Positions 3,001 through 18,570 of a DNA stretch of 64,000 nt are shown piece after piece. How positions within the stretch are numbered: the stretch's first letter is position 1; the number at the start of each line of letters is the position of its first letter. A program made the translations under genes and the position numbers. This DNA comes from Fimbriosthenelais zetlandica. Its lineage: Eukaryota. The stretch lies in assembly GCA_977030845.1 (NCBI GenBank), contig OZ365113.1:11284001-11348000 (forward strand), written 5' to 3'. The notes beneath the pieces were generated by a model, which was not told the origin of the DNA, ran no database searches, and saw only the letters and a list, made by a program, of their open reading frames with translations.

Positions 3001-6000
3001 AGATAGTAGTGAGAGTCACTGGTGGGGATGTTTACACGGGTGGTGCGGGTGTACGGGTTAGCAGGCATACACAGTACTGGATCCATGGAAGGACTGGTGG
3101 CAGACGGGAGAGGAGGAGACTCCACCGGGGGTGCTACAGGTGATCGGGGCTGCGTGGAGATGGTGGATATCGTGGTCATACCTGAGGTGAACAATGAAAA
3201 CAAGACGATTTAAATCAATGTTAATAGTCGCTTCTTGCTGTTGGTTTTAAAAGGTAATTTTTTTTTATTTTTTTTTAATATTTAGGATGTTTATACAGCG
3301 ACATAATCAATGAATGTATTCAAATGCTTTTAGAAATGAATCATTATGAATAAGATTGAATACAGAGATTTGCCGATGTAAGTATGGTTATATTGGTGAT
3401 TTATTGGTAAACTCACGGTCTTCAGGGTAGACTATATTGGGAGGTGGAGCTCGTTGAGAGACGGGTACAGCAGGCGGGGTGAAACTATCCTGTCTGGCCT
3501 GGGTCGGCGAGGTGTAGATAGTCTGCTGGGCTATAGCTTTCTTCGCTTGTACTGGCATGATGGAGGGTTTACCTACAGGCACAGTGACGGGAGCTTCTGA
3601 CGCGGGCAACACAGAGGATCTGTACAACAAGGATAGACAAATAAGCAATATTAAATTCAATATTAAATTTAATAAAGTAGAAAAGAATAGTCGGGATTTA
3701 ATGGAATCAAATTTAAACCTGAGAGGATAGGCATTATACTGAAACATCATTTCTTGTAAAAAGAAAAATATCTTTCGAGGGTAATCAAGAAATATTAGTA
3801 AATACCTGGTTATTGTAAGGGGAGGAGGGGTCTCCCGCTCCACGGGGGTCTGTTTCTGGCTTGCGGCACTAAAAGCTAAGAAATCAGCTTCAGCACTGGC
3901 TGACTCCACCACAAGTTGCTTAGGCTTCTTTATTCCAAACTTCTTGTTCTGATTCCGAAATCTGGGGGTTTAGAATCAGATGATTAGATCATTTCAAACA
4001 ATGGCTCCCTTTCAACCTTACACCTTATTCGAATTGTAAATTATATGGAAAATCTAACCCTGAAGCCAACCCCACAACGACCCAGCGTATTCGATTGCAA
4101 AACCATAAACTTGAGCCCCTTGAGCACAAATTCCTTTTAGGAAAAAGTGCTAAAGACAACAAATTTCTTTTAGCAATTTGCAGTTGGCGTTAGCAGATGT
4201 CAATTTGAATGAAACATTGCTAGTTGGATTTTTTGATATTTGTGTGATTTTGCGGTGGTTAGGTGTGATTTTTAGTTCGCAAAATTAGCGAATAACAGTC
4301 ATTTTCTCTTAGCAATGTAGCATTTTTATTTGCAAATTGCGACAGTGCGATCGGGTACAGCGAGCCCAGAGATACTAGTTATGAAACAGAAGAAGTCAGA
4401 TTGGAGTAACGCACCTTTCCATTTCTTCCTGGGAATGAGCAAAGGTACAGGTGGTGCCCCGGGGACATCGACCTTTCTGTAGGAGGTCACGACACATGGA
4501 CGTTTTAAACTTGTTATTCTGGTGAGCTATAGGTTCAGCCTTCCCCGAGTTACGAGCGTGGAAAAAATCAATGAGACCTTCAACCACGGTCTGAGCTGAA
4601 CGCATAATGGCGTCCAAGTTCTCCCACGATGGCGGCGGACTGTCTGTTGAAAATATATTATACACATTTAATTATATTTGTACCCCTATTTCTATTATCT
4701 GACCAGAAAAAATATTAATTACGTCTAATGTCAATAAGGGATTAAGTATACGATTCTTGCTTACCGGGGCTGGGGTCAATGTTAGCTAGTAGATCAAAAT
4801 GAGCTTTGAGTCGAGAAAGTCCCCCTGGGTCGTTGGTGCGCTGAAGGGCTAGCATAAGTTCTGAGACACTCTGTGAAAATGACTGTGGTGTTTGAAGCTG
4901 GAAATAAATTATATCCGATTTAAGATAAATAATTCACCTACCTATTTCAGATGATTAAAATCATAGAGGAAGTACGTACCTTATCAATGATAGACTGCAT
5001 ATAAGACTTGTGAGCCGCGTCCCCATATAAGAGTGACGACCACTGCTCGGGTGAGATACGGAGACCAGCCTCGGTGGCTATTTGTACAATCTGGGAATCA
5101 TGTTCGCGGCGCAAGGCTTCATAAGTCCTGAACTCGTCCTTCAACTGCATCAGTGATGACTCCTCCTCTCTTTTGGTGACCTAATAGATTAAAGGTTGAC
5201 AACTATTTCAGTCATCTTATTCTCCAGACCACATGATACAATTTATTTCATCCAAACATCCAAACCTGCCCATAATATACGTAGGCCACCAACCCCATGT
5301 AAAATCCCCTGGTGAAGACCGTATAATAAAGGTGGAAAGCTTAGATAAGTTCTGGGTCCTTCCCTTCCATATTCACGTATTTAGAAAACATTTCGTTAAC
5401 CACCGATTGGGAGCGGAGAAACCTAATATAGTTTACCTTGAAGCATGAAGCTCGGTACAGGAGTTGCACTACATGGCCCACGGCGGTTTTAGAAGCTTGC
5501 GTGTATTGTGATTCCAGTCGTTGAACGGCAAAGAGTACAAGTACTTTACGAGACAAGGCCGATCCATCCTCAAGAGCCAGTAATACCAACTTGAGGACCT
5601 CTTCTTGCATGGCTTTAAAATAAAATAATCAAGTTTTCTCCTGAATATTTATGCATCATATGTAGTAAATAAGTAATGTTACAAGAATAGTCTTTCATGG
5701 AAGACTTAATAAGCATTTTCAAAGTGTGTCAAACCTTTAAGATTCGGGGTTTTTTTGGGTTTTTTTTTATATAATCTATTTTTATTCTTGAGGTGTATAC
5801 AAATGTTTATGTAACAACTAGCGGTCTCGGGATGTTTTACAGTTATCGATCCCTTACCTGGGCCCAGGAACTGACAACCTCTGGCCCTCACTGCCGCCCA
5901 CAGATTGGCTGAGAGTTGTTGAGGGTTTTGGTGTTGCAGTATTAACTCTGTGACAGTCCTTTCTCCCAGAGATCGTGCGGCACGCATGGCTCGTGCCCGA

Positions 6001-6767
6001 CCCTCTTCCTCCAGTAGTTGACAGTTGACAAGGGTGACAAGCTTCCTCTGCATGGGTCGACTTAATACTGGACCAGCAGAGGAACTTGACTGGCTCCCGG
6101 AGGCTACAATAAAGACGTGATAAAAACATGAGGTTAAACTCAATTAATAAATAAATTGTATAAAACCATTGGATCCGACAGGAAAAGTGGATGGAATTGA
6201 GGAAAGGTGAAGTAAAACTTACGTTGGGAGGACATGGGTTTTAAATGGACAGCAAGGTTCTCGATACATCTTTTGGCTGAAGTGTAAAACTTGTAATTTT
6301 CGGCTAGACTGTCAGCAGCATGGTTGGTTTCTAACTGGTCAGGAATGGCAACACCCACTAGCTGCAGGAGGGCAAAGTTAACGGGCAGTTCATCGATCTC
6401 CCTGGAAATGACATTCTGATCAAATGGACATTTCTTCTGCTCAAACTTCTCAAGACACACCTAGAAAGACAAGAAAATAAAATGCAAGTCCGGGAAAAGT
6501 GAGGGAAGACAATTTCCTATCATATATTATTTACTGTCCCTCCCATTTATTAGGTTCCACCCAAAATATTTAGGCTAGATGTAGCCCATAATAGTATACC
6601 AGAATATAACATGGGAAATAATCAAATTACTGTACCTTGCAAATTGTGTGTCCACATCCTAAACTTATGGGTCGGTGATGAGTCTCTCCAAAGACATTGT
6701 AACAGATAGGACAAGAGAGGAACTCCGTCCATTGCGGGGCTGTCGTGGGCGGGCTTATTTTACTCAT
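1..6767 (-). CDS. RC3H1/RC3H2: Roquin (RING - ROQ/HEPN - CCCH zinc finger RNA-binding E3 ligase), multi-exon, 3' end beyond window start
   Basis: Hand-spliced GT-AG exons, phase-consistent except across the N gap: 6636-6767, 6223-6460, 5858-6103, 5437-5612, 4980-5180, 4765-4897, 4415-4643, 3806-3961, 3417-3619, 2973-3181, 2357-(>=2567, 5' part in N gap), 2119-2249, 1591-1736, 955-1087, 321-595, 1-37. Hallmarks: [57 protein letters not shown]...[19 protein letters not shown]...SKYGPISR. Confidence 0.97.
98..303 (+). mobile_element. 5'-truncated non-LTR retroelement 3' end with poly(A), antisense in a Roquin intron
   Basis: Aligns by eye with 1324-1541 (AGGTTGTGA.CCCGGCGAGTTTT...TCAGGACCGCCTGAAAA...GTGTCCTTG..A-tail). 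Confidence 0.7.
321..595 (-). CDS. RC3H1/RC3H2: Roquin coding exon 15
   Basis: Open frame [24 protein letters not shown]...HNTLWRLNE; TATTAG acceptor, AA|GTAAGT donor. Confidence 0.82.
686..831 (+). repeat. Dispersed repeat family copy 1 of 3
   Basis: TTTTAGTTAGAATTT.TATAG.GCC...CCAGCT.ACACTCTTGATTA.TCAAGTTTTCGTATGATTTTCAGCTGGGGGCTC also occurs at 58124-58274 (+) and partially at 9708-9797 (-). Confidence 0.85.
955..1087 (-). CDS. RC3H1/RC3H2: Roquin coding exon 14 (conserved C-terminal motif)
   Basis: [44 protein letters not shown] resembles the vertebrate DIIPF...SKWGAISR motif; TTGCAG acceptor, CAG|GTGAGG donor. Confidence 0.92.
1145..1541 (+). mobile_element. Longer copy of the same LINE-like 3' end with poly(A), antisense in a Roquin intron
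   Basis: Shared 3' 218 bp with 98-303. The extra 5' part reads as a decayed LINE ORF2 C-terminus ([10 protein letters not shown]...L.G...IF), recognised by eye only. Confidence 0.6.
1591..1736 (-). CDS. RC3H1/RC3H2: Roquin coding exon 13
   Basis: [25 protein letters not shown]...EFSLRDYP; TTTCTAAG acceptor, CC|GTAAG donor, phase 0 to 2. Confidence 0.8.
1746..1865. repeat. 37-bp tandem repeat, ~3 copies
   Basis: Unit ATACATAACAGGTAAGACATTTAATATACATAAAAAT; AGGTAAG at 1761, 1798, 1835. Confidence 0.95.
2119..2249 (-). CDS. RC3H1/RC3H2: Roquin coding exon 12
   Basis: [44 protein letters not shown]; TTCCAG acceptor, GTAAGT donor, phase 1 to 0. Confidence 0.82.
2357..2567 (-). CDS. RC3H1/RC3H2: Roquin coding exon 11 (5' part hidden in N gap)
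   Basis: [18 protein letters not shown] resembles the Roquin QLEELxxRKxEI coiled segment; donor AG|GTCAGC gives phase 1, matching the next exon. Confidence 0.85.
2568..2704. other. Assembly gap (137 N) next to an (ATGA)n microsatellite
   Basis: N run directly visible; (ATGA/ACGA)n at 2705-2820. Confidence 0.99.
2705..2820. repeat. (AATG)n-type microsatellite
   Basis: Imperfect ATGA/ATGG/ACGA tetramers. Confidence 0.95.
2973..3181 (-). CDS. RC3H1/RC3H2: Roquin coding exon 10 (Pro-rich region)
   Basis: [25 protein letters not shown]...[13 protein letters not shown]; CCTCAG acceptor, AAG|GTGACA donor. Confidence 0.86.
3417..3619 (-). CDS. RC3H1/RC3H2: Roquin coding exon 9 (Pro-rich region)
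   Basis: [18 protein letters not shown]...[12 protein letters not shown]; GTACAG acceptor, C|GTGAGT donor. Confidence 0.88.
3806..3961 (-). CDS. RC3H1/RC3H2: Roquin coding exon 8
   Basis: (R)[27 protein letters not shown]...PPLTITR; phase 2 in and out, canonical sites. Confidence 0.88.
4415..4643 (-). CDS. RC3H1/RC3H2: Roquin coding exon 7 (CCCH zinc finger)
   Basis: [32 protein letters not shown]. Confidence 0.96.
4765..4897 (-). CDS. RC3H1/RC3H2: Roquin coding exon 6 (HEPN-C)
   Basis: [44 protein letters not shown]; TTCCAG acceptor, G|GTAAG donor. Confidence 0.93.
4980..5180 (-). CDS. RC3H1/RC3H2: Roquin coding exon 5 (ROQ domain)
   Basis: [67 protein letters not shown]. Confidence 0.97.
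5437..5612 (-). CDS. RC3H1/RC3H2: Roquin coding exon 4 (ROQ domain)
   Basis: [34 protein letters not shown]...[19 protein letters not shown]. Confidence 0.97.
5858..6103 (-). CDS. RC3H1/RC3H2: Roquin coding exon 3 (ROQ domain)
   Basis: [69 protein letters not shown]; donor G|GTAAG. Confidence 0.97.
6223..6460 (-). CDS. RC3H1/RC3H2: Roquin coding exon 2 (RING C-half, HEPN-N)
   Basis: [15 protein letters not shown]...[12 protein letters not shown]...[14 protein letters not shown]; TTTCTAG acceptor, C|GTAAGT donor. Confidence 0.95.
6636..6767 (-). CDS. RC3H1/RC3H2: Roquin coding exon 1 (start codon, RING N-half)
   Basis: [44 protein letters not shown]; acceptor TTGCAG just upstream (exon starts 6777); donor AAG|GTACA; not in the ORF track (<60 aa). 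Confidence 0.95.
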
Positions 6768-7839
6768 GGAGGTAGGTCTGCAATGACAAAACAAAGTGTT
6801 GGTAGGTAGGCATCAAATGGAAAATATCAAGCAGCTTCAAAAACAATTTATGCTTGCTGGAAATACATGAACATGACACTAGAAGGACTAAGGTTTGTCA
6901 CTGTAGATAACATTGTGCCATGCATCTTGAAATTCGACGACAATCAATATTTCTGTGAAGAGGGCAAGGGAAAGGCTTACGGTTCATTATACTGTATGGC
7001 ATGGTCATAATAATTATTACATAGTCATGATGCTGTAACTAACACATTGCAACAGCGTAATTAGTAATGACATTTTCATGTCATTAACGACACAAGGCTA
7101 GCTACCCTTTACAACTAATAGTAGTCTAACAACGTACCGGTACTGTCTGTACTAGTTTAGACTTTAGGTCTATTCAATGCCACATCCATAGGCCTACGTT
7201 TTAAAATAATATTGTATTAAGAATTATGAATTACATTATTGAAAGTCTATATACTATAATTAGGATATCGATATAATTATATAGACATTTATGAAAACAT
7301 TACGTCTATGTATAGTGGACATACCTTAGGCATTTAAGTCTGCAATCACTTATAATTCCCTTGCTGAACTTTTATGGCATGCGATCAGTCGTAAGTTCGC
7401 ACTTCATGACGGCACTGGGGTCAGGAAACCATGATAGAACTGGTAGATTCCAGTTCTATGAGGAAACACAGTGAATCTGACTGTCTCGTGGTGGAAGGCC
7501 TAAGTCTTAGAGGCCAGAAGCCAAAACAAGTTGTGCCGAACAAACATCATCCCGGACCTAAAGGGCCCGGTCAGGTAGAAGTATGAGGAAATATTGCAGC
7601 CGATTTCATGAGTAGATGACAAACATTGTCGACCAAAATAGAAAAGCCTACTATGAAAGTGCGGGTTGCCCGGATGTGACACCCTGATCCGGGCACTAAA
7701 GTAATGGCGCCAGAGTCAAACTCGCGACATTCAGTATAATATATAGAATTGTTACAATATTAGCCATAGTGATAATTTATATGCTACTATATTGACATAT
7801 TTAATTTGGAGAGGTACAGTTCTATGATTGTGCTTACCA

Positions 7840-8612
7840 TTGATTGGAGTGGGAGAATATACCGATGTAAAAGAAAGTGACTCATTGTTGATTGGGCGAT
7901 AATTGGTGTTTTCGGTACTTCAAACAGGACTTTGTCGACATTATATTAGGATTTAAATTCCAGATTATTTTCTTGTAATAAGTCATTCGTCTGGGCTTCG
8001 ATAAACGACCGTAAGCTACTGCCACGACACAAATTAGCCAGTAGCCCTACGCCGGAGTCCAGGATGCACGCTGCATGTCCGCCATCTTGGTCCGTTGCAA
8101 CGGGTATTGGGTCTAACTTTCACGGTTTTGTCGTTTATGTGTTGGTTTCAGTTTTTGGCGGTGGTGGCGTGCGGAGTGAAGAGAGGAGTCGCCCTAGAAC
8201 TTTTCTGTTAGTCTGAAAATACAAACAATTAGATGCAAGACATAAGTATCTTTTATTCACATTAAAATTAATATACGCGTGAAATAAATTTGAAGGTCTT
8301 TAACCTGATTAAAAACTATTTCTCATAGGCCGGCACCGGTAGGTAGTTGTAGTGATACCTAAATTATAGTCAGTCAATCTTTGGTTAAAAATTATGTGGT
8401 TAAAATCTAAGAGGAGATGAAATCTCTAACGGAAAAATAGATACAAAAGAAATAAATTAGATTAAAATCAGTTATATATGAATAAATTGGTCTTTGGTTA
8501 TCCATTCAGTTCCAGAACCTCTAAAGTCTAAACAAGAACACGTGCCGGTTGGTAAATTTTGCGTGTGGAGACCTGAAACCTTCTTCTGTTGGCTTGCTGC
8601 ATTATCTTCAGG
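7840..8612. promoter_or_regulatory. Divergent promoter / 5' non-coding exon region shared by Roquin (-) and gene A (+)
   Basis: Minus strand: CAAGATGGCGG (YY1-type) at ~8079-8089 and donor ATG|GTAAG near 7840. Plus strand: E-box CACGTG at 8539-8544 and donor AGG|GTGAGT at 8612/8613. TSS positions are not determinable from sequence. Confidence 0.55.
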
Positions 8613-9707
8613 GTGAGTATTATTTTGCGAAATTTATTATACTTACGCACTATTACAGATTTAACCTATATAGAACATTTGAGATAAGGTGTTGTGATAC
8701 ATTATACCGGAGAATTATGCGCCAAAGATAATTGCTTACATAGCTGTTTTGTCTTCAAATCACGGGTTGCCAATCGGCATTGGTGTTGGTGAGCGATAAT
8801 GGGGATGTGAAGTGTAAATGCTGTGAAAATATTTGCGTGTTTCTGTTAAAATTGCTGTAATAACAGTCTGTATGTTTAGGCGAGAGTTGCATATGTATTG
8901 TAAATCAATATGATAACATAATACGGACTGAATGGTATAGATTTTAGAGTCAAAAACGTTTGGCGTTTACCAATATATATCCAATAATTATATTATTATT
9001 ATTATATTAAATAGACAACCTGATACCGGTACCATGAAATGATGAATGGTCATAGCCTAACGTTACTGATTACTGTACAGGCCCAGCGTGAACTACCGGT
9101 TTCCTGAAAATATATTGCCAGAAACTAAAAGTATAAGGCACAGAGTATGAAGTAAATAATGAAGAATGGAAAGGTTCACTTTTGTCTCCTGTATTGGCCC
9201 AATGAATTGGGCTACATTTTTGTCTGATTGAAAATTTGAAATGGAGAAAGTAAGATCTTTGGTGATACCGGTACCGTATGTCACTATTGTCAGTGCAAAG
9301 CCGTGTTCCTCCTTCACCAAGAATGAGTAACATTGGTTTAAAGTAGAGAAAGACTGCACTGATGACTTCGCTTAAAAAAACTCCTCCAATCAGTGCCGTC
9401 CAGAAATGAGTATTTGTCAGTGACATGTAAATTATAGCAATGATGATGACAAATATAGGCAAGTGTCATTAAAAAAGTAGGCCTATAATAGGAAGATATG
9501 TGAGGGCAGACATCCCTTTCACACCTAATCCTTTATAGATTTGAAAGTTTTACGACCTCAAGTAATGAAATGGCCCTCTAAATTTAGATATGTGTATTAC
9601 AGTGCTGTATTGCCTAGGCTACACTTCAATAAACAGCCAAGATAAAATAGATAGAATGTGTAAAAAATAGTACATAAATGGCTTTAATCGGGGCCTAAAT
9701 TTTTGCC

Positions 9708-9797: not shown

Positions 9798-9985
9798 TCT
9801 TTGTCTGAATAACCCAGTGTCTTATTAAAAGTATGCCTATAACTTTGTAAATAAATGATCCAGCTGAATGTCTTATATGTTCTTATATTGTGACTTTAGT
9901 CGACTAAGTACCGGTATATGATTGTGGTATATGGTAATGTTAAATTGAAAATGTTTATATTTACGGTGCCACTTTTCAGTTCAAT

Positions 9986-10646
9986 ATGGACGAGGCAGGA
10001 GTAACCGTTGAAGTAGAGCCTCAAGAAGCCCCGACTTTAAAGCGGCCTGCAGATGACAACAGTGATGTAGATGCTCCTCCGTCCAAAGTTGCCAAGACTC
10101 CAAGCTCGTTCAAAAATGTCTTCAGACAACTGAGTCTCATGCGACCCGGTCTTCTCTTCGACTTGGAAGGTGAAGTGGCTTCTGACGGTGTGACGTCGTT
10201 GTATACTATGGTGGTTGACGTGGACGGTGTCAAATTCAGAGGGACCGGTCCAAGTAAGAGAAATGCCAAGGTCCTGGCAGGAGAGCAGGTACTAGCTCAC
10301 CTTGAGGCCCTTGGTGTGAAGCCAATACCAGAGAGTGAACGGCCGCCTAAACCTGAAAATACCAATAAAGGACAGTCCCAAAGTCAAGCTAGCACACTGA
10401 CTGAGGAACAAAAAGCTCAACAGATGGCGGGCAAAAACCCAGTCATGATGCTTCATGAGATAAGACCCAGTTTTGATTGTGAAATTGTGTCGGATGAACG
10501 GAAGGGGACCAGCCGGCGTGTGGAGATGGCCATCACAGTGGACGGGAAGAAGTTTACTGGAGGTGGACGCAGCAATAAGATTGCCAGGGCAAAGGCTGCC
10601 GTCTCCGCACTAGAATCACTCTTTTCATTGGAATTCACAGATTTTG
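9986..10646 (+). CDS. Gene A coding exon 1: bipartite NLS + dsRBD1 + dsRBD2 (ADAR2/ILF3-type dsRBDs)
   Basis: Acceptor TTTTCAG ending 9979, ATG at 9986. LKRPADD..PPSKVAK NLS; L..MRPGL...FRGTGPSKRNAK; GKNPVMMLHEIRP...VDGKKFTGGGRSNKIARAKAAVSALESLF. Two in-phase donors: G|GTGAAA (exon end 10646) or A|GTGAGA (exon end 10652). Confidence 0.92.
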
Positions 10647-10788
10647 GTGAAAGTGAGATATTTTGGAGTTATAAGTAATTCCTTTGGTTGAGTAGCGTCA
10701 TGGCATTATCTAGACATTGGGTATAATCATGCCCTTCGTCTCTTATGTATTCTATCTTTGTAGTTTTATCTTTTTGCTTCCGTTTCAG

Positions 10789-11921
10789 ATGAGATTCCAG
10801 TTTATCTTGGTGACGAAATGAATTGGAGGAAATTTACCAAAAAGGCGGAGAAATCTGCACCAAATCAGACAGCTGATGGTAAGCACCTAAAGAACGCTAT
10901 GATGCAGCTAAATGACATGTATAAAGGTCTTGAATTCAAAGTGAAAGAACGATCTGGACCCGACCACTGCCCTTTCTTCAAAGTGAATGTTGAAATAGAG
11001 GGACAAACATTTGAGGGGCAGGGTAGCACTAAAAAATCGGCCAAGTTAGATGCAGCAGAAAAAGCCTTGGTTGGTTTGTCGCTCACTGGTGCACTGGCTC
11101 AGAGGGCTTCCCAGAAAAGACAGCAAAAATTTGGCACCTCGGTCAAATGGAAAAACGGCGGTCAAGGTGGACAAGGTAAGAATGTACCACAACTGACCCA
11201 ATCTTTCCAGCCAGCCTCTAGTAATGGGTCTGGTGGGGCAGGGAAGCCATGGCAGTCGTCTGGGTCTGGTCGTGGTCGTGGATGGAATCGTCCATCGATG
11301 ATGGGGGATGGTCGTAATGCCAATCAGAATGGACAAATGGGCGGATCAGGGAGAGGTGGTACACAGAGAGGACGCGGTCGTGGGGGTTTGGGTCGTGGTC
11401 GTGGTCGTGGTGGAATGGGTCGTGGTAGCAGCTACAGTCAAGTCATGGAGGGTTACGGTTCTATGTCCGGCCAGCAGACATCCACCTCTGGCCGTGGTGC
11501 TTCCAAATTATTCACTGGTCGGGGTGTTGGTGATTTGAGCAATAACCTCTCCACTGATTTATCTACACTAGGTGGACTAACATCTGAGTCTAGTAGTCCC
11601 ATCACAGGAAGAGGCAGGGGCCAGACACATGCCCCGCTCTATGGTCGTACCTCCCAAGCTGGTCAAAGCTGGGACCAGCAAGCAACATGGAATCATACTT
11701 ACTCCTCCTACCAAGATCCTTATGATACCAACAGTCAGTGGAAATCGCAAGATTATGGTTATGACACTGGTTATGATGCCTCATACGACACTGGTTATGA
11801 TACCACTGCTTATGATACCACTGGTTATGATACAAACTATGATACTACTTATGACTCTACTTACACTGGTGGATATCAAGGTGAAAGCTCGGAGTGGAGC
11901 TCTGAATATTATCACTACTAG
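10789..11921 (+). CDS. Gene A coding exon 2: dsRBD3 + RGG/RG region + Tyr/Gly/Ser/Asp-rich low-complexity tail
   Basis: Acceptor TTTCAG ending 10788, phase 1. KNAMMQLNDMYKGLEFKVKERSGPDHCPFFKVNVEIEGQTFEGQGSTKKSAKLDAAEKAL is close to ADAR2 dsRBD1; GRGRGG repeats; YDTGY-type repeats; stop TAG at 11919-11921. Confidence 0.93.
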
Positions 11922-13210: not shown

Positions 13211-15328
13211 TCACAAATTGATTTTGATTGAGAGAGAGTGCCTCTCAGCATCTGGAGGACACTGAGCTCAAGGCATCAACGTTGGACTTTACTGTGAGGA
13301 ACGTAGATATTGTCTCCTTTGCATCTCATCCAAAGCTTCTCATGCTCCTATAGGCCGCAGAACGTGATAGACTATTATATTAGATGGTTATAAGTCGCCT
13401 TCTCACCACCCCCCCCCCCCCCCCCCACCTTTAACTTTTAAGTAGATATACCTGCACCTCTCTACATATCCATTCCTAAGCGTGTATTCCCAGGTATTAT
13501 GCCAAGTATTCTCAGACCTGTATCTATCAATCAGCCCGACCTGTCTTTTTTCCAAGTTGAGGACCAAATGTAGACATGACCTTGCACCTGATGACATCCT
13601 ATGATCAAGATAAGTGACTCAGGATCGCTTTGCAATTAACAAATTTAAATTGGACCAGTGGATTCCGTCGGGTTTCTTTCCTTCGATTCAGTCCTAGGAT
13701 TGGAATGATAATTGCTATTATCGTAATGATAGAGATATCAGATTGGAAAGTTGTATAAATCCTAATCTTGCAATTATATAATATATATTCTACGTATCAT
13801 TGACAGTCTTTGTACTGAGCTAATGCGTCCATGTATCTACCTATCTGACAGACTTCCCATCGTTTGGTCGAGAATAACATTTCTTCATGACCATGATGCA
13901 TATTTCCCTTTACAGCGACTTATACCGATCTTAACTTGCAATATAGCGCTACACAGGAGAGATCGTGGAAAGCAAAACATCTAATTATTGAAATGGATAT
14001 TGTCACCACTGTTGAAATTTCTCGATCTTGAATGTATAAGATATGTATACCAGAACTGATTAGGAAGTGCTGATCATTATTTTGTTGATTAATGACCATT
14101 GAAGAATTTTGGAAAAAGCACCTCGGCTCAGTATGATCTCAAATTTTGCTACCGTGGATTTCTTTTGTTTCAATAAAATCCACAATGATGTACACATGTA
14201 TGACCAGGTGTATGAAGTCACCGAAGAGAAATACACTAGATGCCGGCGACTATAGATGGTTCTAAAAATATAAACTATAACTCGATGGGTACAGCAGGCT
14301 GCTAGCCGAGGGAAGACATATATTCTCATAGAATTATAACAATCGTAATGGCCTCTGTATTTGTGATCAGACATGTTATGTACATATTTGTAAAAGTTCA
14401 AAATTAGATAGGTTGGAATTCGTCGCAAAAAAGTCCTTCGGGGAGTGGTGTTTCTGGACAATAATTGGGGTTTGTGTTTAAAGCAACTTTATCATCTATT
14501 GCCTAATGATTGCAAGTGAAAACGCCCTTTTTTCTAAAGTATAATTTGTATCTGTATATATGATAATGGTCTAAGGGGGTATAGGCTACATTTAATTTGT
14601 CCTTGCACGCTTGGTTGACTTTGGGCAAAGTTAACCCAAAAACCTGTTAGTGACCAAGTGGACAACTGATTGCATTTCAGAACATAATGTATGTTAATCT
14701 CTGGTCACCTCAAAATGAAGGTGAAAAACACATTATGAACAAACTCCCCAAAGATTTATTATGCATGGTATTCTATTAGTGTGTGTAATAGTATTCATTT
14801 CTACAGTAACTCTAGGCCTATACATGTTATTGGACCCGTGTTCACTTGTAAGTCGTAAAGAATTCATGGCAATTTGGTAGAAGAAAATGTTATTAAAAGG
14901 AATCCTTGTTTTAGCACCATTAAATGTCTTTTGTAAAAAATAAACCGCCTTTGCTTTATTATGTCAATGGGGTTATGGTATAAGAATATTTTACCATTAT
15001 TAATTTTGATTCTGCTCACCACACTCCCCCCACCCCCTCCAAACATACCCATGCATGCCGATTTGTTTATATTTAAGTTTTTTTCCAAGTGTTTTTTGAT
15101 AAAAGGTTCATTATGATGAATTAGTTTTCTCAATGACGAATGTTTGGTAAAATAATAATTTTCCATCTTTTTAATTCCTTATTTTCACAATATTATCGTG
15201 CTCTTGAATATTTTGTCCAATCTGAATCTGGTAGTATTTTATTGAATACCATTACTTATAATTACTTACACATATTATATCATTTCTCAAACACAGGGAA
15301 TGGAGAAGAAATAGGAAAAGTGGAGAAC

Positions 15329-16760
15329 ATGATCGTGGCAATGAAGTCAGAAGTAGTCCAGGATGATAATATAAAGATGGATAGACTAAGTGATAAACGC
15401 TCTGCTGACATGAGAGATATACAAGATGAAATGAAACGACATGAGACAAAGGCCCGCCCGGGAGACCAGCCCCGTATAAAGATTAAAGAAACTAGTACGC
15501 CTAAAGTTCTTAAGAGAAAGATTGAGGTGAAATTTGAAGATTCACTAACTCCTAACGAAGCTACAACACTAGATAAACAGGAAACCAAGAGGAGGAAAAA
15601 CAACGGAGATGAATTGAAGAAGCAAGTCAATTCGAAAGAAGCAAGTGATGTTGAAACCAGATCCCTGACCAAAAAAAGTATGATTTTGAAAACCTATGAG
15701 AAATATAATCTCAGGGAAAGAAAGTATAAATGTACTACAGTTGATGCAGGGAGAGATGATTTCCTCAACTTTGACAATATTTTAACGGATCAGAAGGAAA
15801 CAAAGAGTACGAAAGAGAACAAACATGAAATGAAGATACACCGTAAACATGATAAAACTGGCAGTGGAAGTGGCCAACCCCCTGAAGTAGTGAAGACGCC
15901 AACTCGTGTTGAAACCAAATCCAAAGTCCCAAATCCACAGAGCAAAGATGCCATGAAGATAGAATGTAAAGAGGCGAGAAAGGACAGTGGGGGAAACCAG
16001 CCTCTTGAAAAAAGGAAAGAAACGAGGTTGCCTCGTCCTAATGTTGACACCAAAACTAAAGTTGCTGATGAGTATGAGCGTAAGTTTGAGTTGGATCATG
16101 ACTATGATTCCCTTACTCCTGTCAAAGTTATTATAATTGATGACTCGGAGACAGAGAGTAGTGATGGAGAGGTTCCAAATGAGTCTGATGTGATGGTCAT
16201 CAGTAGTGACGAGTCAGAGTCAGAGAGTAGTGATGGAATGTATGGAGAGGTTCCACGTGAGTCCAATGGTATAATAATCAGTAGTGACGAAGATGAGCTT
16301 GAAGAGGAGAGATGGCTGACCAACAGCTGTACAAAACCGGTGAAAAAGAGAATCCGGTACCTTTATCAGTTCAAGCCTGACCTCCAACATGTTCAAGCAG
16401 AGAGAGTGGGTTCCGTCTACCAAATACAGTCCACCATTAATGTTCACAGGTATGTTGGTAAAGGTGCAACAAAACTTATGGCCAAATTATCTTTAGCCTC
16501 AAGATTTTGGTACTCGCTTTGCGAGGATTGCCCTATTACCCGGCACCCAATGACAGCTTTGACTCAACTGATGGGTGGTAGTAGATATGGCGAAGAGTCA
16601 CTGAATATTGATGCTGAAAACAGAGGGTGGTATGCTACTGAAGTAATCATACCGGGACATGGAAAATTTACTGCCAACGGTCCAACCCAAAAATCTGCAC
16701 GTTTCCTCGCAGCGGCAAAAGCAATCGAAACAATTTTTGGGTTGAAGTGTGAAACCAGTA
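15329..16760 (+). CDS. Gene B coding exon 1: charged disordered N-terminus, 3 SIM-like motifs, 2 divergent dsRBDs
   Basis: Acceptor ...AAACACAG ending 15296; first in-frame ATG at 15329 (alternative 15341). dsRBD-like KKRIRYLYQFKPDL...YVGKGATKLMAK and RHPMTAL...KFTANGPTQKSARFLAAAKAIETIFGL; donor A|GTGAGT at 16760/16761 (phase 1). Upstream coding exons are not excluded. Confidence 0.82.
16121..16309 (+). repeat. Tandemly duplicated ~66-75-bp unit encoding hydrophobic-core + Ser/acidic (SIM-like) motifs
   Basis: GAGAGTAGTGATGGA...GAGGTTCCA...ATCAGTAGTGACGA recurs; protein VKVIIIDDSETESSD / DVMVISSDESESESSD / GIIISSDEDELEEE. Confidence 0.85.
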
Positions 16761-16972
16761 GTGAGTATTTGATTTATTTATTAGGGCCCTATGATACATT
16801 AAATTAATCTGATCGATTTAATAGCTCCATGTCCCAGGCATTAAGATACTGTGTTAATATAAATGTGTTCGATATAAATCGGGTGCCTACTGTTTATTTC
16901 TCATAGCAATTGGACTACATTGTATTTGATAAAATATAGCTAAAATACAAATTTAAATTATACTTTTCACAG

Positions 16973-18570
16973 ATAGACTGCCGGTGATCAGTCATAGGCC
17001 TAATGGCTTGATGTCCTCTTCCGAGATGAAGATGCTCCTTTCCAAGAAGCCGCTCAATTCCAAGAAGAAGCCGCTCATTTCCAAGAAGAAGCCGCTCAAT
17101 TCCAAGAAGAAGCCGCTCACTTCCAAGAAGAAGCCTCTCACTTCCGAGAAGAAGCCTCTCAATTCCCAGAAGAAGCCTCTCAATTCCCAGAAGAAGCCGC
17201 TCACTTCCGAGAAGAATCCGCTCACTTCCGAGAAGAAGACGCTCACTTCCGAGAAGAAGACGCTCACTTCCGAGAAGAAGCCTCTTAATTCCCAGAAGAA
17301 GCCGCTCACTTCCGAGAAGAAGCCGCTCACTTCCGAGAAGAAGCCGCTCACTTCCGAGAAGAAGCCGCTCACTTCCGAGAAGAAGCCGCTCACTTCCGAG
17401 AAGAAGCAACAAAAGGCAAAGACGTGTAACAACACAGGCCTATCTACAATGCGACAATCCTCTCCCGTAGCAACTACAATGTCGGTGACTGCTACCTTGT
17501 CGACACAGGATAGAGCACTTTGTGACCAACCGAGTAACGCAAAGAAAAGTTTAGGTGGCACTCACACCAGAAAGCTGGCGGACACTTCTCTGTCTCAACC
17601 ATCCTCCCATTCCAAGCTTCCCCGCGACGTGCCAAAACATGTTACCCCAGCTGGTAATTCGAAGAATCCGAAGGACATTAAAGTTAAAGTAGAACCTTCA
17701 ACTTCCCAGGCTGGCCCTAGCAAGAACCATTCCAAGCTTTCCCGCGACGTGCCAAATCATGTTACCCCAGCTGGTAATTCGAAGAATCCGAAGGACATTA
17801 AAGTTAAAGTAGAACCTTCAACTTCCCAGGCTGGCCCTAGCAAGAACCATTCCAAGCTTTCCCGCGACGTGCCAAATCATGTTACCCCAGCTGGTAATTC
17901 GAAGAATCCGAAGGACATTAAAGTTAAAGTAGAACCTTCAACTTCCCAGGCTGGCCTTAGCAAGAACCATTCCAAGATTTCCCGCGACGTGCCAAATCAT
18001 GTTACCCCAGCTGGTAATTCGAAGAATCCGAAGGACATTAAAGTTAAAGTAGAACCTTCAACTTCCCAGGCTGGCCTTAGCAAGAACCATTCCAAGATTT
18101 CCCGCGACGTGCCAAATCATGTTACCCCAGCTGGTAATTCGAAGAATCCGAAGGACATTAAAGTTAAAGTAGAACCTTCAACTTCCCAGCCTCAACCATC
18201 CTCCCATTCTAAGCGTTCCCATGACGTGTCAGAGGGGAGAGCTCCACGTAGTACTACTACTAATACTACTAAGAGCACCGCATATATAAAGGTAGAGCCT
18301 TCATCCTCCCAGCCTCGTCCTAGCAAGGACTCGTCTTCAAATCTCTTTGAAGAACCTAAACCAGGACTGTCTCGCAGCAGACAGTACGAGATAGACAGGA
18401 AACCTATTAAAAGTCTTTTATGTTTGGAATCCGATTCTTCTCGCCCAATGTCCACAAGATCCATCCAGAACCAGGGTATTCACCCGATTGATTATGGTGG
18501 ATATTTCGGCAATTATCCTGCACACAATGGTAGAAGTGACAAAGATTTTACACGGAACTATCGTGAATAA
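16973..18570 (+). CDS. Gene B coding exon 2: Lys-rich heptad array + 40-aa SUMO-site repeats
   Basis: Acceptor TTTTCACAG ending 16972, phase 1, continuing into the 528-aa ORF (NRLPVISHRP...); stop TAA at 18568-18570. Confidence 0.82.
17041..17409 (+). repeat. 21-bp coding minisatellite, ~17.5 copies (S[K/E/Q]KKPL[T/N])
   Basis: Unit TCC[A/G/C]AGAAGAAGCCGCTCACT directly visible. Confidence 0.98.
17608..18327 (+). repeat. 120-bp coding tandem repeat, 5 near-identical copies + 1 degenerate copy
   Basis: Units start at 17608, 17728, 17848, 17968, 18088, with the degenerate copy at 18205; 40-aa unit HSKLSRDVPNHVTPAGNSKNPKDIKVKVEPSTSQAGPSKN. Confidence 0.98.

What the first reader, a model, noticed from the sequence alone, without database searches (positions are those of the whole stretch)
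9986..11921. Stand-alone 'DZF-less ILF3-like' protein: NLS - 3x dsRBD - RGG - Tyr/Gly/Ser/Gln tail
Seen: a KRP..D....PPSKVAK bipartite NLS sits directly before dsRBD1. dsRBD1 and dsRBD2 resemble the ILF3/STRBP and ADAR2 pair (GPSK..AK; GKNPVM.L.E), and dsRBD3 resembles ADAR2 dsRBD1. These are followed by RGG and a Y/G/S/Q/D-rich tail. No deaminase domain follows, and there is little room for a DZF domain: the candidate upstream exon has an in-frame TGA at 8574-8576 and Roquin starts ~1-2 kb upstream. Established: vertebrate ILF3/NF110 is DZF-NLS-dsRBD-dsRBD-RGG-GQSY, and its dsRBDs are ADAR2-like; Drosophila DIP1 is a non-catalytic protein with related dsRBDs. Inference: this could be an invertebrate representative of the module that fused to a ZFR-like DZF domain to create ILF3, or a non-catalytic ADAR competitor.
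Basis: partly seen in the sequence, partly recalled or inferred. Interest (0 to 1): 0.75.

Follow-up and report, generated by a model that had tools for sequence, protein, structure and literature searches.

The report
Deaminase-less ADAR2-type dsRNA-binding protein
This invertebrate (probably annelid) gene encodes three ADAR2/ILF3-type double-stranded-RNA-binding domains followed by an arginine-glycine region and a tyrosine-rich tail, with no editing enzyme domain and no ILF3-type dimerisation domain; it belongs to an unnamed wider family and may temper RNA editing, though no expression data could be obtained.

Summary
The gene has two coding exons on the + strand (9986-10652 and 10789-11921) and encodes 599 aa. 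In order these are a KRP/acidic/basic motif, dsRBD1, dsRBD2, a conserved junction motif, dsRBD3, an RG/RGG region and a Tyr/Thr/Asp/Ser tail.

The window holds no DZF or deaminase domain in any frame. The genome's DZF and ADAR loci lie on other contigs. The start ATG (Kozak context, just after an acceptor site) and the C-terminal stop are conserved in relatives. dN is far below a saturated dS.

The closest solved structures are the ADAR2 and NF90/ILF3 dsRBD pairs. In dsRBD trees the gene and its relatives form their own clade (UFBoot 100), outside the ILF3/STRBP clade (100). AU tests cannot say whether that clade is nearer ADAR2 or ILF3. An ADAR2-like 'LEFT' extension and a shared phase-1 intron after dsRBD2 favour an ADAR2 origin.

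Deaminase-less relatives with the same junction motif occur in other taxa. A paralogous terminal exon lies just downstream of ADAR2 in three species.

The reading as an ILF3 precursor is neither shown nor excluded. No RNA run was listed. The scan noted this stretch before only as this same finding.

The parts
9966..9979 (+). Pyrimidine tract plus CAG acceptor, 6 nt before the ATG. It implies a non-coding 5' exon further upstream, which was not located.
   Evidence: Sequence. The same acceptor-then-ATG layout occurs in L007 and L006 with 6- and 5-nt spacing, non-conserved residues and A(-3)/G(+4) in all three.
9986..10652 (+). Coding exon 1: Met1 to Glu222 plus the first base of codon 223 (phase-1 donor A|GTGAGA).
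   Evidence: ORF and splice reconstruction. 'FTDFGE' is conserved in four orthologues, and the L007 donor is A|GTAAGT.
10040..10096 (+). K19-K37: KRP, an acidic stretch, then PPSKVAK. This is the positional counterpart of the ADAR2 and NF90 N-terminal NLS region, with a weak second basic cluster.
   Evidence: Flank comparison with deaminase-bearing and DZF-bearing proteins and the 5dv7 alignment. NLS function is inferred.
10106..10315 (+). dsRBD1 (aa 41-110). It is divergent: it keeps K-R-x-A-K but has lost the GPxH loop His and the helix-1 Met/Glu.
   Evidence: HMM envelope, seed alignment, AF2 pLDDT 78-94 and PDB matches to ADAR2 dsRBM1 and STRBP dsRBD1.
10427..10633 (+). dsRBD2 (aa 148-216), the GKNPVM type, with an ADAR2-like C-terminal 'FSLEFT' extension.
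   Evidence: 50-53 bits to ADAR2 dsRBM2 and 48 bits to ILF3 dsRBD2; 46% identical to the own ADAR2 dsRBD2 on C13; flank table.
10653..10788 (+). Intron (136 nt, phase 1).
   Evidence: It lies one codon from the phase-1 intron that ends the own ADAR2 dsRBD exon.
10789..11921 (+). Coding exon 2 up to the TAG stop (11919-11921).
   Evidence: ORF. The C-terminal '(S/G)xW..(E)YYxY-stop' is conserved in orthologues.
10791..10844 (+). Junction motif EIPVYLGDEMNWRKFTKK (pattern P-x-[FY]-x-G-x-[DE]-x-x-W followed by basic residues). This is the hallmark of the wider family.
   Evidence: Pattern scan: it matches only family members, 6 of the 167 stored proteins. Also.
10884..11081 (+). dsRBD3 (aa 255-320), fully canonical (helix-1 Met, GPDH loop, KKSAK).
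   Evidence: Pfam 4.7e-11; 61.8 bits to ADAR2 dsRBM1; dN/dS 0.03 against the L007 orthologue.
11263..11625 (+). Gly/Ser/Gln/Arg-rich region with RG/RGG repeats (GGTCGT hexamer arrays).
11682..11918 (+). Tyr/Thr/Asp/Ser-rich low-complexity tail (nine YD dipeptides in the protein; 15-nt and 12-nt DNA repeats at 11789-11863).

Best explanation
This is an intact, selected, stand-alone gene for a non-catalytic dsRNA-binding protein of the ADAR2/ILF3 dsRBD lineage.

Architecture (shown): a KRP-acidic-basic (NLS-like) motif, dsRBD1, dsRBD2, a conserved junction motif, dsRBD3, RG/RGG, and a Tyr/Asp/Thr-rich tail. It has neither a deaminase nor a DZF domain.

Family (shown): it belongs to a wider, unnamed family of deaminase-less proteins with the plan dsRBD1-dsRBD2-junction motif-dsRBD3(-dsRBD4).

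Origin (inferred): it is most likely an old offshoot of ADAR2. It shares ADAR2's post-dsRBD2 'LEFT' extension and its phase-1 intron position.

Mechanism (inferred):
- The protein enters the nucleus through the N-terminal motif and/or the RGG region.
- It binds A-form dsRNA mainly through the canonical dsRBD3. dsRBD2 and the degenerate dsRBD1 add avidity or protein contacts.
- It uses the RGG region and the Tyr-rich tail for extra RNA contacts and for self-association.
- By occupying ADAR substrates it would modulate A-to-I editing or other dsRNA processing, most likely damping it, as NF90/ILF3 and catalytically dead ADAR relatives do.
For: Gene model, boundaries and absence of other domains:
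- Searches give the exon structure.
- The ATG start (Kozak context, directly after an acceptor) is conserved in three species.
- The C-terminus is conserved in orthologues.
- There is no DZF or deaminase anywhere in the window, and none on contig C19.

Selection: 72.5% aa identity to the L007 orthologue, with dS saturated and dN 0.21. dN/dS is 0.03 for dsRBD3.

Fold and nearest structures.

Own-genome paralogues: dsRBD1 and dsRBD2 hit ADAR2 dsRBD1 and dsRBD2 on C13 colinearly. dsRBD3 hits the exon downstream of ADAR2.

Phylogeny: the gene's family plus P0010 form a clade at 99.3/100, outside the DZF clade at 99.4/100.

ADAR2-like features: the 'LEFT' extension and the intron phase.

Wider family:
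- Colinear alignments to P0010 (9e-35) and P0021 (1e-24).
- P0042, P0056 and P0073 share the plan, and P0073 is a single-exon stand-alone gene.
- The junction motif is specific to the family.

[quoted passage not shown] DZF proteins regulate editing at specific sites (PMC9479739).
Against: - No RNA run was listed. Transcription, the 5' exon and the splice junction therefore rest on comparative evidence only.
- dsRBD1 and dsRBD2 have lost the loop-2 His, and dsRBD1 has also lost the helix-1 residues, so their RNA binding is uncertain.
- The second basic cluster of the putative NLS is weak.
- The phylogeny does not resolve ADAR2-side from ILF3-side placement.
- The deaminase-less relatives do not form one clade on dsRBD1+2; the deep nodes are unresolved.
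- The effect on editing is argued purely by analogy.
Confidence: 0.7

Rival explanations
1. The gene is a surviving invertebrate form of the NLS-dsRBD-dsRBD-RGG-low-complexity module. That module fused to a ZFR-type DZF domain at the vertebrate stem to give ILF3/STRBP, so the family would be sister to the ILF3 dsRBD module rather than to ADAR2.
For: - The order of elements matches NF110 apart from the DZF domain and dsRBD3.
- A single 197-residue alignment to NF90 includes the KRP motif.
- FastTree puts dsRBD2 next to DZF-protein dsRBD2, but with support of only 0.37.
- The AU test does not reject sisterhood to the DZF clade (p 0.45).
- The genome has no DZF+dsRBD gene.
- The literature already proposes a domain shuffle of ADAR2-type dsRBDs with Zfr DZF (PMC4770229).
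Against: - The post-dsRBD2 extension and the intron position are ADAR2-like, not ILF3-like (LEKLFP...KKKK).
- No similarity to DZF proteins is detectable outside the dsRBDs.
- RGG and Tyr-rich tails arise easily by convergence.
- In relatives the Tyr-rich region sits at the N-terminus instead (P0042, P0073).
- No deuterostome member of the family was identified.
Confidence: 0.15
2. The gene is a hard-wired duplicate of a deaminase-less ADAR2 isoform. In this clade the exon just downstream of ADAR2 (two dsRBDs + RGG + Tyr-rich tail) would be an alternative 3' terminal exon, spliced to the ADAR2 dsRBD1-2 exon. Gene A would have arisen by DNA duplication of those two exons.
For: - The terminal exon on C13 (L010:3843-5188) has a phase-1 acceptor and the same junction motif.
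- The ADAR2 dsRBD exon ends with a phase-1 donor.
- The same deaminase-then-exon order, on the same strand and 2.4-4.8 kb apart, occurs in two other species.
- No conserved coding segment lies between them.
- dsRBD3 of gene A is sister to the first dsRBD of that exon.
- P0021 joins a near-canonical ADAR2 dsRBD pair to a non-deaminase third dsRBD on a transcript-sized contig.
Against: - No transcript evidence exists for the junction.
- Phase compatibility alone has a 1-in-3 chance.
- A short, unconserved first exon of an independent gene could hide in the gap.
- P0073 shows that the architecture also exists as an independent single-exon gene with no deaminase ORF within 10 kb.
- The AU test gives only p 0.11 for gene A as sister to the own ADAR2.
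Confidence: 0.3
3. The gene model is incomplete: further coding exons (DZF upstream or deaminase downstream) belong to it.
For: An acceptor site lies 6 nt before the ATG, so at least one upstream exon exists. No RNA data were available.
Against: - No DZF or deaminase signal appears in any frame of the 64-kb window (E > 0.5 with filters off).
- The ATG has Kozak context in three species, while the acceptor-to-ATG spacing (6, 6 and 5 nt) and the residues there are not conserved.
- The stop and the C-terminal motif are conserved.
- Roquin is transcribed divergently from 3.2 kb upstream.
Confidence: 0.04

Closest known systems
ADAR2 (ADARB1; double-stranded RNA-specific editase 1), N-terminal half
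   Same: - A KRP-acidic-basic motif followed by a type-1 then a type-2 (GKNPVM) dsRBD, colinear with gene A.
- The invertebrate 'F-x-LEFT' extension after dsRBD2, with a phase-1 intron right after it.
- Best PDB and Foldseek match (2l3j).
- The closest paralogue in the same genome.
   Different: - No deaminase domain.
- A third dsRBD, an RGG region and a Tyr-rich tail instead.
- dsRBD1 and dsRBD2 have lost the loop-2 His.
- It forms a separate long-branch clade.
ILF3/NF90-NF110 and STRBP/SPNR (vertebrate DZF-dsRBD proteins)
   Same: - An NLS-like KRP motif and two ADAR2-type dsRBDs, then RGG and a Tyr-containing low-complexity tail.
- Non-catalytic.
- Second-best PDB and Foldseek match (5dv7).
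   Different: - No DZF (NF45-dimerisation) domain.
- An extra dsRBD3 and the junction motif.
- The tail is acidic Tyr/Asp/Thr, not Gly/Gln/Ser/Tyr.
- The post-dsRBD2 sequence is unlike LEKLFP...KKKK.
- It lies outside the 100%-supported DZF clade.
Unnamed deaminase-less relatives: P0010 (783 aa, 4 dsRBDs + RG tail), P0021, P0042, P0056, P0073, and the exon downstream of ADAR2 on C13
   Same: They share the dsRBD1-dsRBD2-junction motif (P-x-[FY]-x-G-x-[DE]-x-x-W)-dsRBD3 plan. Alignments to P0010 and P0021 are colinear (E 9e-35 and 1e-24). Several also carry RG-rich or Tyr-rich regions.
   Different: - The number of dsRBDs differs (3 or 4).
- The Tyr-rich region is N-terminal in P0042 and P0073.
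- P0042 and P0073 have coiled-coil-like Ala/Glu tails instead of RGG.
- Their source organisms are unknown.
Drosophila Blanks / DIP1 and the C. gigas 'editase 1-like' 265-aa protein (XP_011429684.1)
   Same: They are invertebrate proteins with dsRBDs and a basic stretch but no catalytic domain. Blanks has been proposed as NF90-like by HHpred (PMC7144943). The oyster protein lacks a deaminase and its last dsRBD falls near the dsRBD3 clade.
   Different: The fly proteins were not compared here. The oyster protein is not colinear: its type-2-like domain comes first, and it has no junction motif and no RGG or Tyr tail.

Membership tests
dsRBD (Pfam PF00035 dsrm) proteins | alpha1-beta1-beta2-beta3-alpha2 fold, matched above the Pfam gathering score | tested here: met
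   Both ORFs score above the cut-off (48 and 43.5 bits against 23). The AF2 model shows two such folds in exon 1.
dsRBD (Pfam PF00035 dsrm) proteins | Canonical RNA-contact regions (helix-1 residues, GPxH loop, KKxAK) | tested here: inconclusive
   dsRBD3 has all three. dsRBD2 keeps helix 1 and NKxAR but has lost the His. dsRBD1 keeps only KRxAK (seed alignment). Binding was not measured.
ILF3/NF90 - STRBP family | N-terminal DZF (DZF_N + DZF_C) domain that heterodimerises with ILF2/NF45 | tested here: not met
   No DZF signal in any frame of the window. PF07528 matches only on contigs C10 and C1, with no dsrm near them.
ILF3/NF90 - STRBP family | Tandem ADAR2-type dsRBDs preceded by an NLS and followed by RGG | tested here: met
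   Here, however, a third dsRBD lies between dsRBD2 and the RGG region.
ILF3/NF90 - STRBP family | dsRBD pair falls inside the ILF3/STRBP clade | tested here: not met
   The DZF-protein clade (99.4/100) excludes it. Sisterhood to that clade is not rejected (AU p 0.45).
ADAR (ADAR1/ADAR2) enzymes | C-terminal adenosine deaminase (A_deamin, PF02137) domain | tested here: not met
   There is no match in the window or on contig C19, and the stop codon is conserved.
ADAR (ADAR1/ADAR2) enzymes | ADAR2-type dsRBD1-dsRBD2 pair with upstream NLS region | tested here: met
ADAD (TENR-like) | One dsRBD plus a catalytically inactive deaminase domain | tested here: not met
   It has three dsRBDs and no deaminase-like sequence.
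Unnamed deaminase-less ADAR2-like family (P0010 / P0073 type) | dsRBD1-dsRBD2, then the junction motif P-x-[FY]-x-G-x-[DE]-x-x-W with basic residues, then dsRBD3; no deaminase | tested here: met
   Colinear BLASTP, motif scan and local deaminase HMM labelling.
Drosophila DIP1 / Blanks | Orthology of the dsRBD pair | not tested

The most novel reading that the evidence does not exclude
In this spiralian clade the ADAR2 locus would encode both the editor and its own non-catalytic counterpart. A conserved exon just downstream of the deaminase exons (two dsRBDs + RGG + Tyr-rich tail) would serve as an alternative 3' end, spliced to the ADAR2 dsRBD1-2 exon. Gene A would be a duplicated, hard-wired copy of that deaminase-less isoform. 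The same NLS-dsRBD-dsRBD-RGG-low-complexity module could be what was joined to a ZFR-type DZF domain to make vertebrate ILF3/STRBP.
Probability: 0.2. Interest if true: 0.75.

Novelty: new variant of a known kind. Interest (0 to 1): 0.5.

Why it matters
Surveys of ADAR evolution collect genes by their deaminase domain (PMC9989829, PMC6651903), so they cannot see deaminase-less relatives of ADAR2.

This gene and its relatives show that such proteins exist as conserved, selected genes in invertebrates. They already combine ADAR2-type dsRBDs with an RGG region and a Tyr-rich tail, a combination otherwise known from vertebrate NF110/ILF3.

They are natural candidates for built-in modulators of A-to-I editing and of the dsRNA response in animals that lack ILF3. 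They also give the published 'ADAR2 dsRBDs + Zfr DZF' shuffle model for the origin of NF90 (PMC4770229) a concrete intermediate to test.

The exon that sits downstream of ADAR2 in three species raises the further possibility of one locus producing both editor and antagonist.

Tried and rejected
- RNA evidence: the look-up of sequencing runs listed no run, RNA or any other kind (three other attempts found the machine busy). Read laying could therefore not be used.
- Named full-length orthologues: three homologous-protein searches returned only ORF-level fragments from unannotated assemblies.
- ESM Atlas feature search: only generic dsRBD clusters below 0.9, so nothing usable.
- Resolving ADAR2-side against ILF3-side origin: the single-domain FastTree has weak deep nodes. 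Concatenated IQ-TREE plus AU tests rejected none of four placements (one run timed out).
- A single clade of all deaminase-less relatives on dsRBD1+2: not recovered; they are scattered with unresolved deep nodes.
- A hidden conserved coding exon between the ADAR2 last exon and the C13 terminal exon: none found.
- An ADAR2 C-terminal extension model (dsRBDs after the deaminase): no precedent among 45 deaminase-bearing hits.
- Homology of the RGG or Tyr tail to ILF3 tails: no alignment outside the dsRBDs.
- Gene B dsRBDs: only marginally similar to gene A (best E 6e-4). Not pursued, because another agent had already followed it up.
- Organism identity: not established here. 'Probable annelid/lophotrochozoan' comes from other agents' unchecked notes.
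Full report
**What is there.** On the + strand two long ORFs (9986-10678 and 10818-11921) are joined by a short intron.
- The donor A|GTGAGA follows 'FTDFGE' at 10652, and the acceptor ...tttcag precedes 10789. Both are phase 1.
- Four orthologues conserve 'FTDFGE'. The nearest one (L007) has a consensus donor A|GTAAGT and the same acceptor, giving '...GE-N-EIPVYLG...'.
- The product is 599 aa. In order it has K19-K37 (KRP, acidic stretch, PPSKVAK), dsRBD1 (41-110), dsRBD2 (148-216), a junction motif (224-241), dsRBD3 (255-320), a Gly/Ser/Gln/Arg region with 15 RG and 3 RGG, and a 79-residue tail (17 Y, 14 T, 11 D, 10 S, 7 G).
- Pfam dsrm matches both ORFs above the gathering score.
- An AlphaFold2 model of exon 1 shows two alpha-beta-beta-beta-alpha domains at pLDDT 78-95. 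The N-terminus and the linker are disordered.

**Gene limits.**
- An acceptor (pyrimidine tract + CAG) lies 6 nt before the ATG here, 6 nt before it in L007 and 5 nt before it in L006. The residues between acceptor and ATG are not conserved, and all three ATGs have A at -3 and G at +4. This fits a non-coding 5' exon and a true start at 9986.
- All orthologous ORFs begin 17-30 residues before the KRP motif.
- All end with '(S/G)xW..(E)YYxY-stop'.
- A filter-free six-frame HMM scan of all 64 kb finds no DZF and no deaminase (best E 0.57 and 0.71). dsRBD signal appears only in this gene and in the neighbouring gene B.
- Genome-wide, DZF_N occurs only on contigs C10 and C1, with no dsrm nearby. 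A_deamin occurs on C13, C25, C10, C11 and C21, never on C19.
- Roquin (RING 6627-6794, ROQ 5341-6143, CCCH 4396-4665) is on the minus strand, head-to-head and 3.2 kb away.

**Is it a working gene?** Against the L007 orthologue (72.5% aa identity) synonymous sites are saturated while dN is 0.21. dN/dS is 0.03 for dsRBD3, 0.16 for the N-terminus and 0.25 for the RGG region. Intact orthologues exist in at least three other assemblies. No sequencing run could be listed, so expression is inferred rather than shown.

**Relationships.**
- phmmer against PDB ranks rat ADAR2 dsRBM1-2 (2l3j, 1e-20) and NF90 (5dv7, 8e-19) first for exon 1. It ranks ADAR2 dsRBM1 and ILF3 dsRBD1 first for dsRBD3 (about 1e-27). 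ADAR1, TRBP, Staufen and PKR score far lower. Foldseek agrees.
- Within this genome, dsRBD1 and dsRBD2 hit the two dsRBDs of the ADAR2 gene on C13 colinearly (37% and 46% identity). dsRBD3 hits an exon just downstream of that ADAR2 gene (53%) and ADAR2 dsRBD1 (56%).
- In a 352-domain tree, dsRBD3 is sister to the first dsRBD of that downstream exon (0.75). The clade joining both of that exon's dsRBDs with dsRBD3 has 0.82 support within the type-1 (ADAR2 d1 / ILF3 d1) group.
- On concatenated dsRBD1+2 (134 columns, IQ-TREE), the gene's family plus P0010 is monophyletic (SH-aLRT 99.3, UFBoot 100). So are the 14 DZF proteins (99.4/100). The point where the family attaches is unresolved.
- AU tests give p 0.45 for sister to the DZF clade, 0.72 with the ADAR2 clade, 0.31 with the invertebrate ADAR2 subclade and 0.11 with the own ADAR2. 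Only 2000 replicates were run, so these values are approximate.
- Two qualitative characters favour ADAR2. The extension after dsRBD2 reads 'F(S/G)LEFTDFGE', like invertebrate ADAR2 'F(H/N)LEFTSSPG' and unlike ILF3 'LEKLFP...KKKK'. A phase-1 intron follows it in both genes, one codon apart.
- The KRP-acidic-basic motif before dsRBD1 is common to ADAR2, ILF3/STRBP and this gene.

**A wider, unnamed family.**
- BLASTP aligns residues 28-336 colinearly with P0010 (783 aa; four dsRBDs then an RG/Gly-rich tail; E 9e-35) and residues 18-337 with P0021 (E 1e-24).
- P0042, P0056 and P0073 have the same dsRBD1-dsRBD2-junction-dsRBD3 plan and no deaminase.
- The junction motif P-x-[FY]-x-G-x-[DE]-x-x-W followed by basic residues occurs only in these proteins: 6 of the 167 stored.
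- P0010 and P0021 sit on transcript-sized contigs. P0073 is a single-exon gene on a contig longer than 1 Mb, with no deaminase ORF within 10 kb.
- In P0042 and P0073 the Tyr-rich region is N-terminal.
- On dsRBD1+2 these proteins do not form one clade.

**The ADAR2-linked exon.**
- On C13, about 5 kb after the last deaminase exon, lies a terminal exon (L010:3843-5188). It has a phase-1 acceptor, the junction motif, two dsRBDs, RG repeats and a Gly/Tyr/Ser/Glu tail.
- The same order (deaminase ORFs, then this exon, same strand, 2.4-4.8 kb apart) is seen in two other assemblies at 52-63% identity.
- The ADAR2 dsRBD exon ends with a phase-1 donor, and no conserved coding segment lies between the two.
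- The exon is therefore either an alternative 3' end of ADAR2 or a tightly linked gene with an undetected first exon. Transcripts are needed to decide.

**Mechanism (inferred).** dsRBD3 keeps all canonical RNA-contact elements. dsRBD2 keeps helix 1 and part of the Lys motif. dsRBD1 keeps only KRxAK. The likeliest role is a nuclear dsRNA binder that shares substrates with ADAR2 and modulates editing or other dsRNA processing. The RGG region and the Tyr/Asp tail would add RNA contacts and self-association. The precedents are NF90's ADAR2-like binding mode (PMC4770229) and DZF proteins acting as site-specific regulators of editing (PMC9479739).

**Known or new?**
- NF90 and SPNR are reported to be vertebrate-only, and to have arisen by combining ADAR2 dsRBDs with the Zfr DZF domain (PMC3467086, PMC4770229).
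- ADAR surveys in metazoans and lophotrochozoans classify genes by the deaminase domain and do not mention deaminase-less relatives (PMC9989829, PMC6651903, PMC7762157).
- Fly Blanks has been likened to NF90 (PMC7144943).
- I found no description of the family defined here. An oyster protein annotated as 'editase 1-like' (265 aa, no deaminase) is related but not colinear.
- I therefore rate this a new variant of a known kind.

**Limits.**
- There is no RNA evidence.
- The source organisms of most relatives are unknown.
- The short dsRBD alignments do not resolve deep branching.
- Fly DIP1 and Blanks, and vertebrate intron positions, were not compared.
- The organism label (probable annelid) comes from other agents' unchecked notes.

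Noticed in passing
L010:3843-5188 (own genome C13, about 17,461,343-17,462,688); also L016:~10060-11221: A terminal exon encoding the junction motif, two dsRBDs, RG repeats and a Gly/Tyr-rich tail lies 2.4-5 kb downstream of the last ADAR2 deaminase exon. It is on the same strand in this genome and in two other assemblies. Its phase-1 acceptor is compatible with the phase-1 donor of the ADAR2 dsRBD exon. It may be an alternative 3' end of ADAR2.
   Followed up: partly
window 15140-18570 (+): A tandem paralogue (gene B) has two strongly degenerate dsRBDs that end at the same exon boundary, with unrelated Lys/Ser/Pro-rich repeats. In the relative L007 the second tandem copy (7229-9322) still has the full three-dsRBD + RGG + Tyr-tail architecture. 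Gene B has therefore diverged in this lineage.
   Followed up: partly
window 4396-6794 (-): A Roquin-like gene (RING, ROQ, CCCH exons) is transcribed divergently from gene A, so the two share an intergenic region of about 3.2 kb. A run of N at about 2560-2720 lies further along the Roquin side. It was left as it is.
   Followed up: partly
P0008 (Protopterus annectens LOC122811791, 2012 aa): This lungfish 'uncharacterized protein' carries a DZF domain plus seven dsRBD matches. That is an unusually expanded ILF3/STRBP-like architecture.
   Followed up: no
P0042, P0073 (other organisms): These deaminase-less relatives carry their Tyr/Asp/Gly/Glu-rich low-complexity region at the N-terminus and an Ala/Glu-rich helical tail at the C-terminus. 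The low-complexity module has therefore moved or arisen more than once in the family.
   Followed up: no
L006 5510-11059: The orthologue in this assembly splits the region equivalent to exon 1 into three exons, with introns after 'SFK' and inside the end of dsRBD1. The window gene and L007 have it in one exon, so introns were lost or gained within the family.
   Followed up: no
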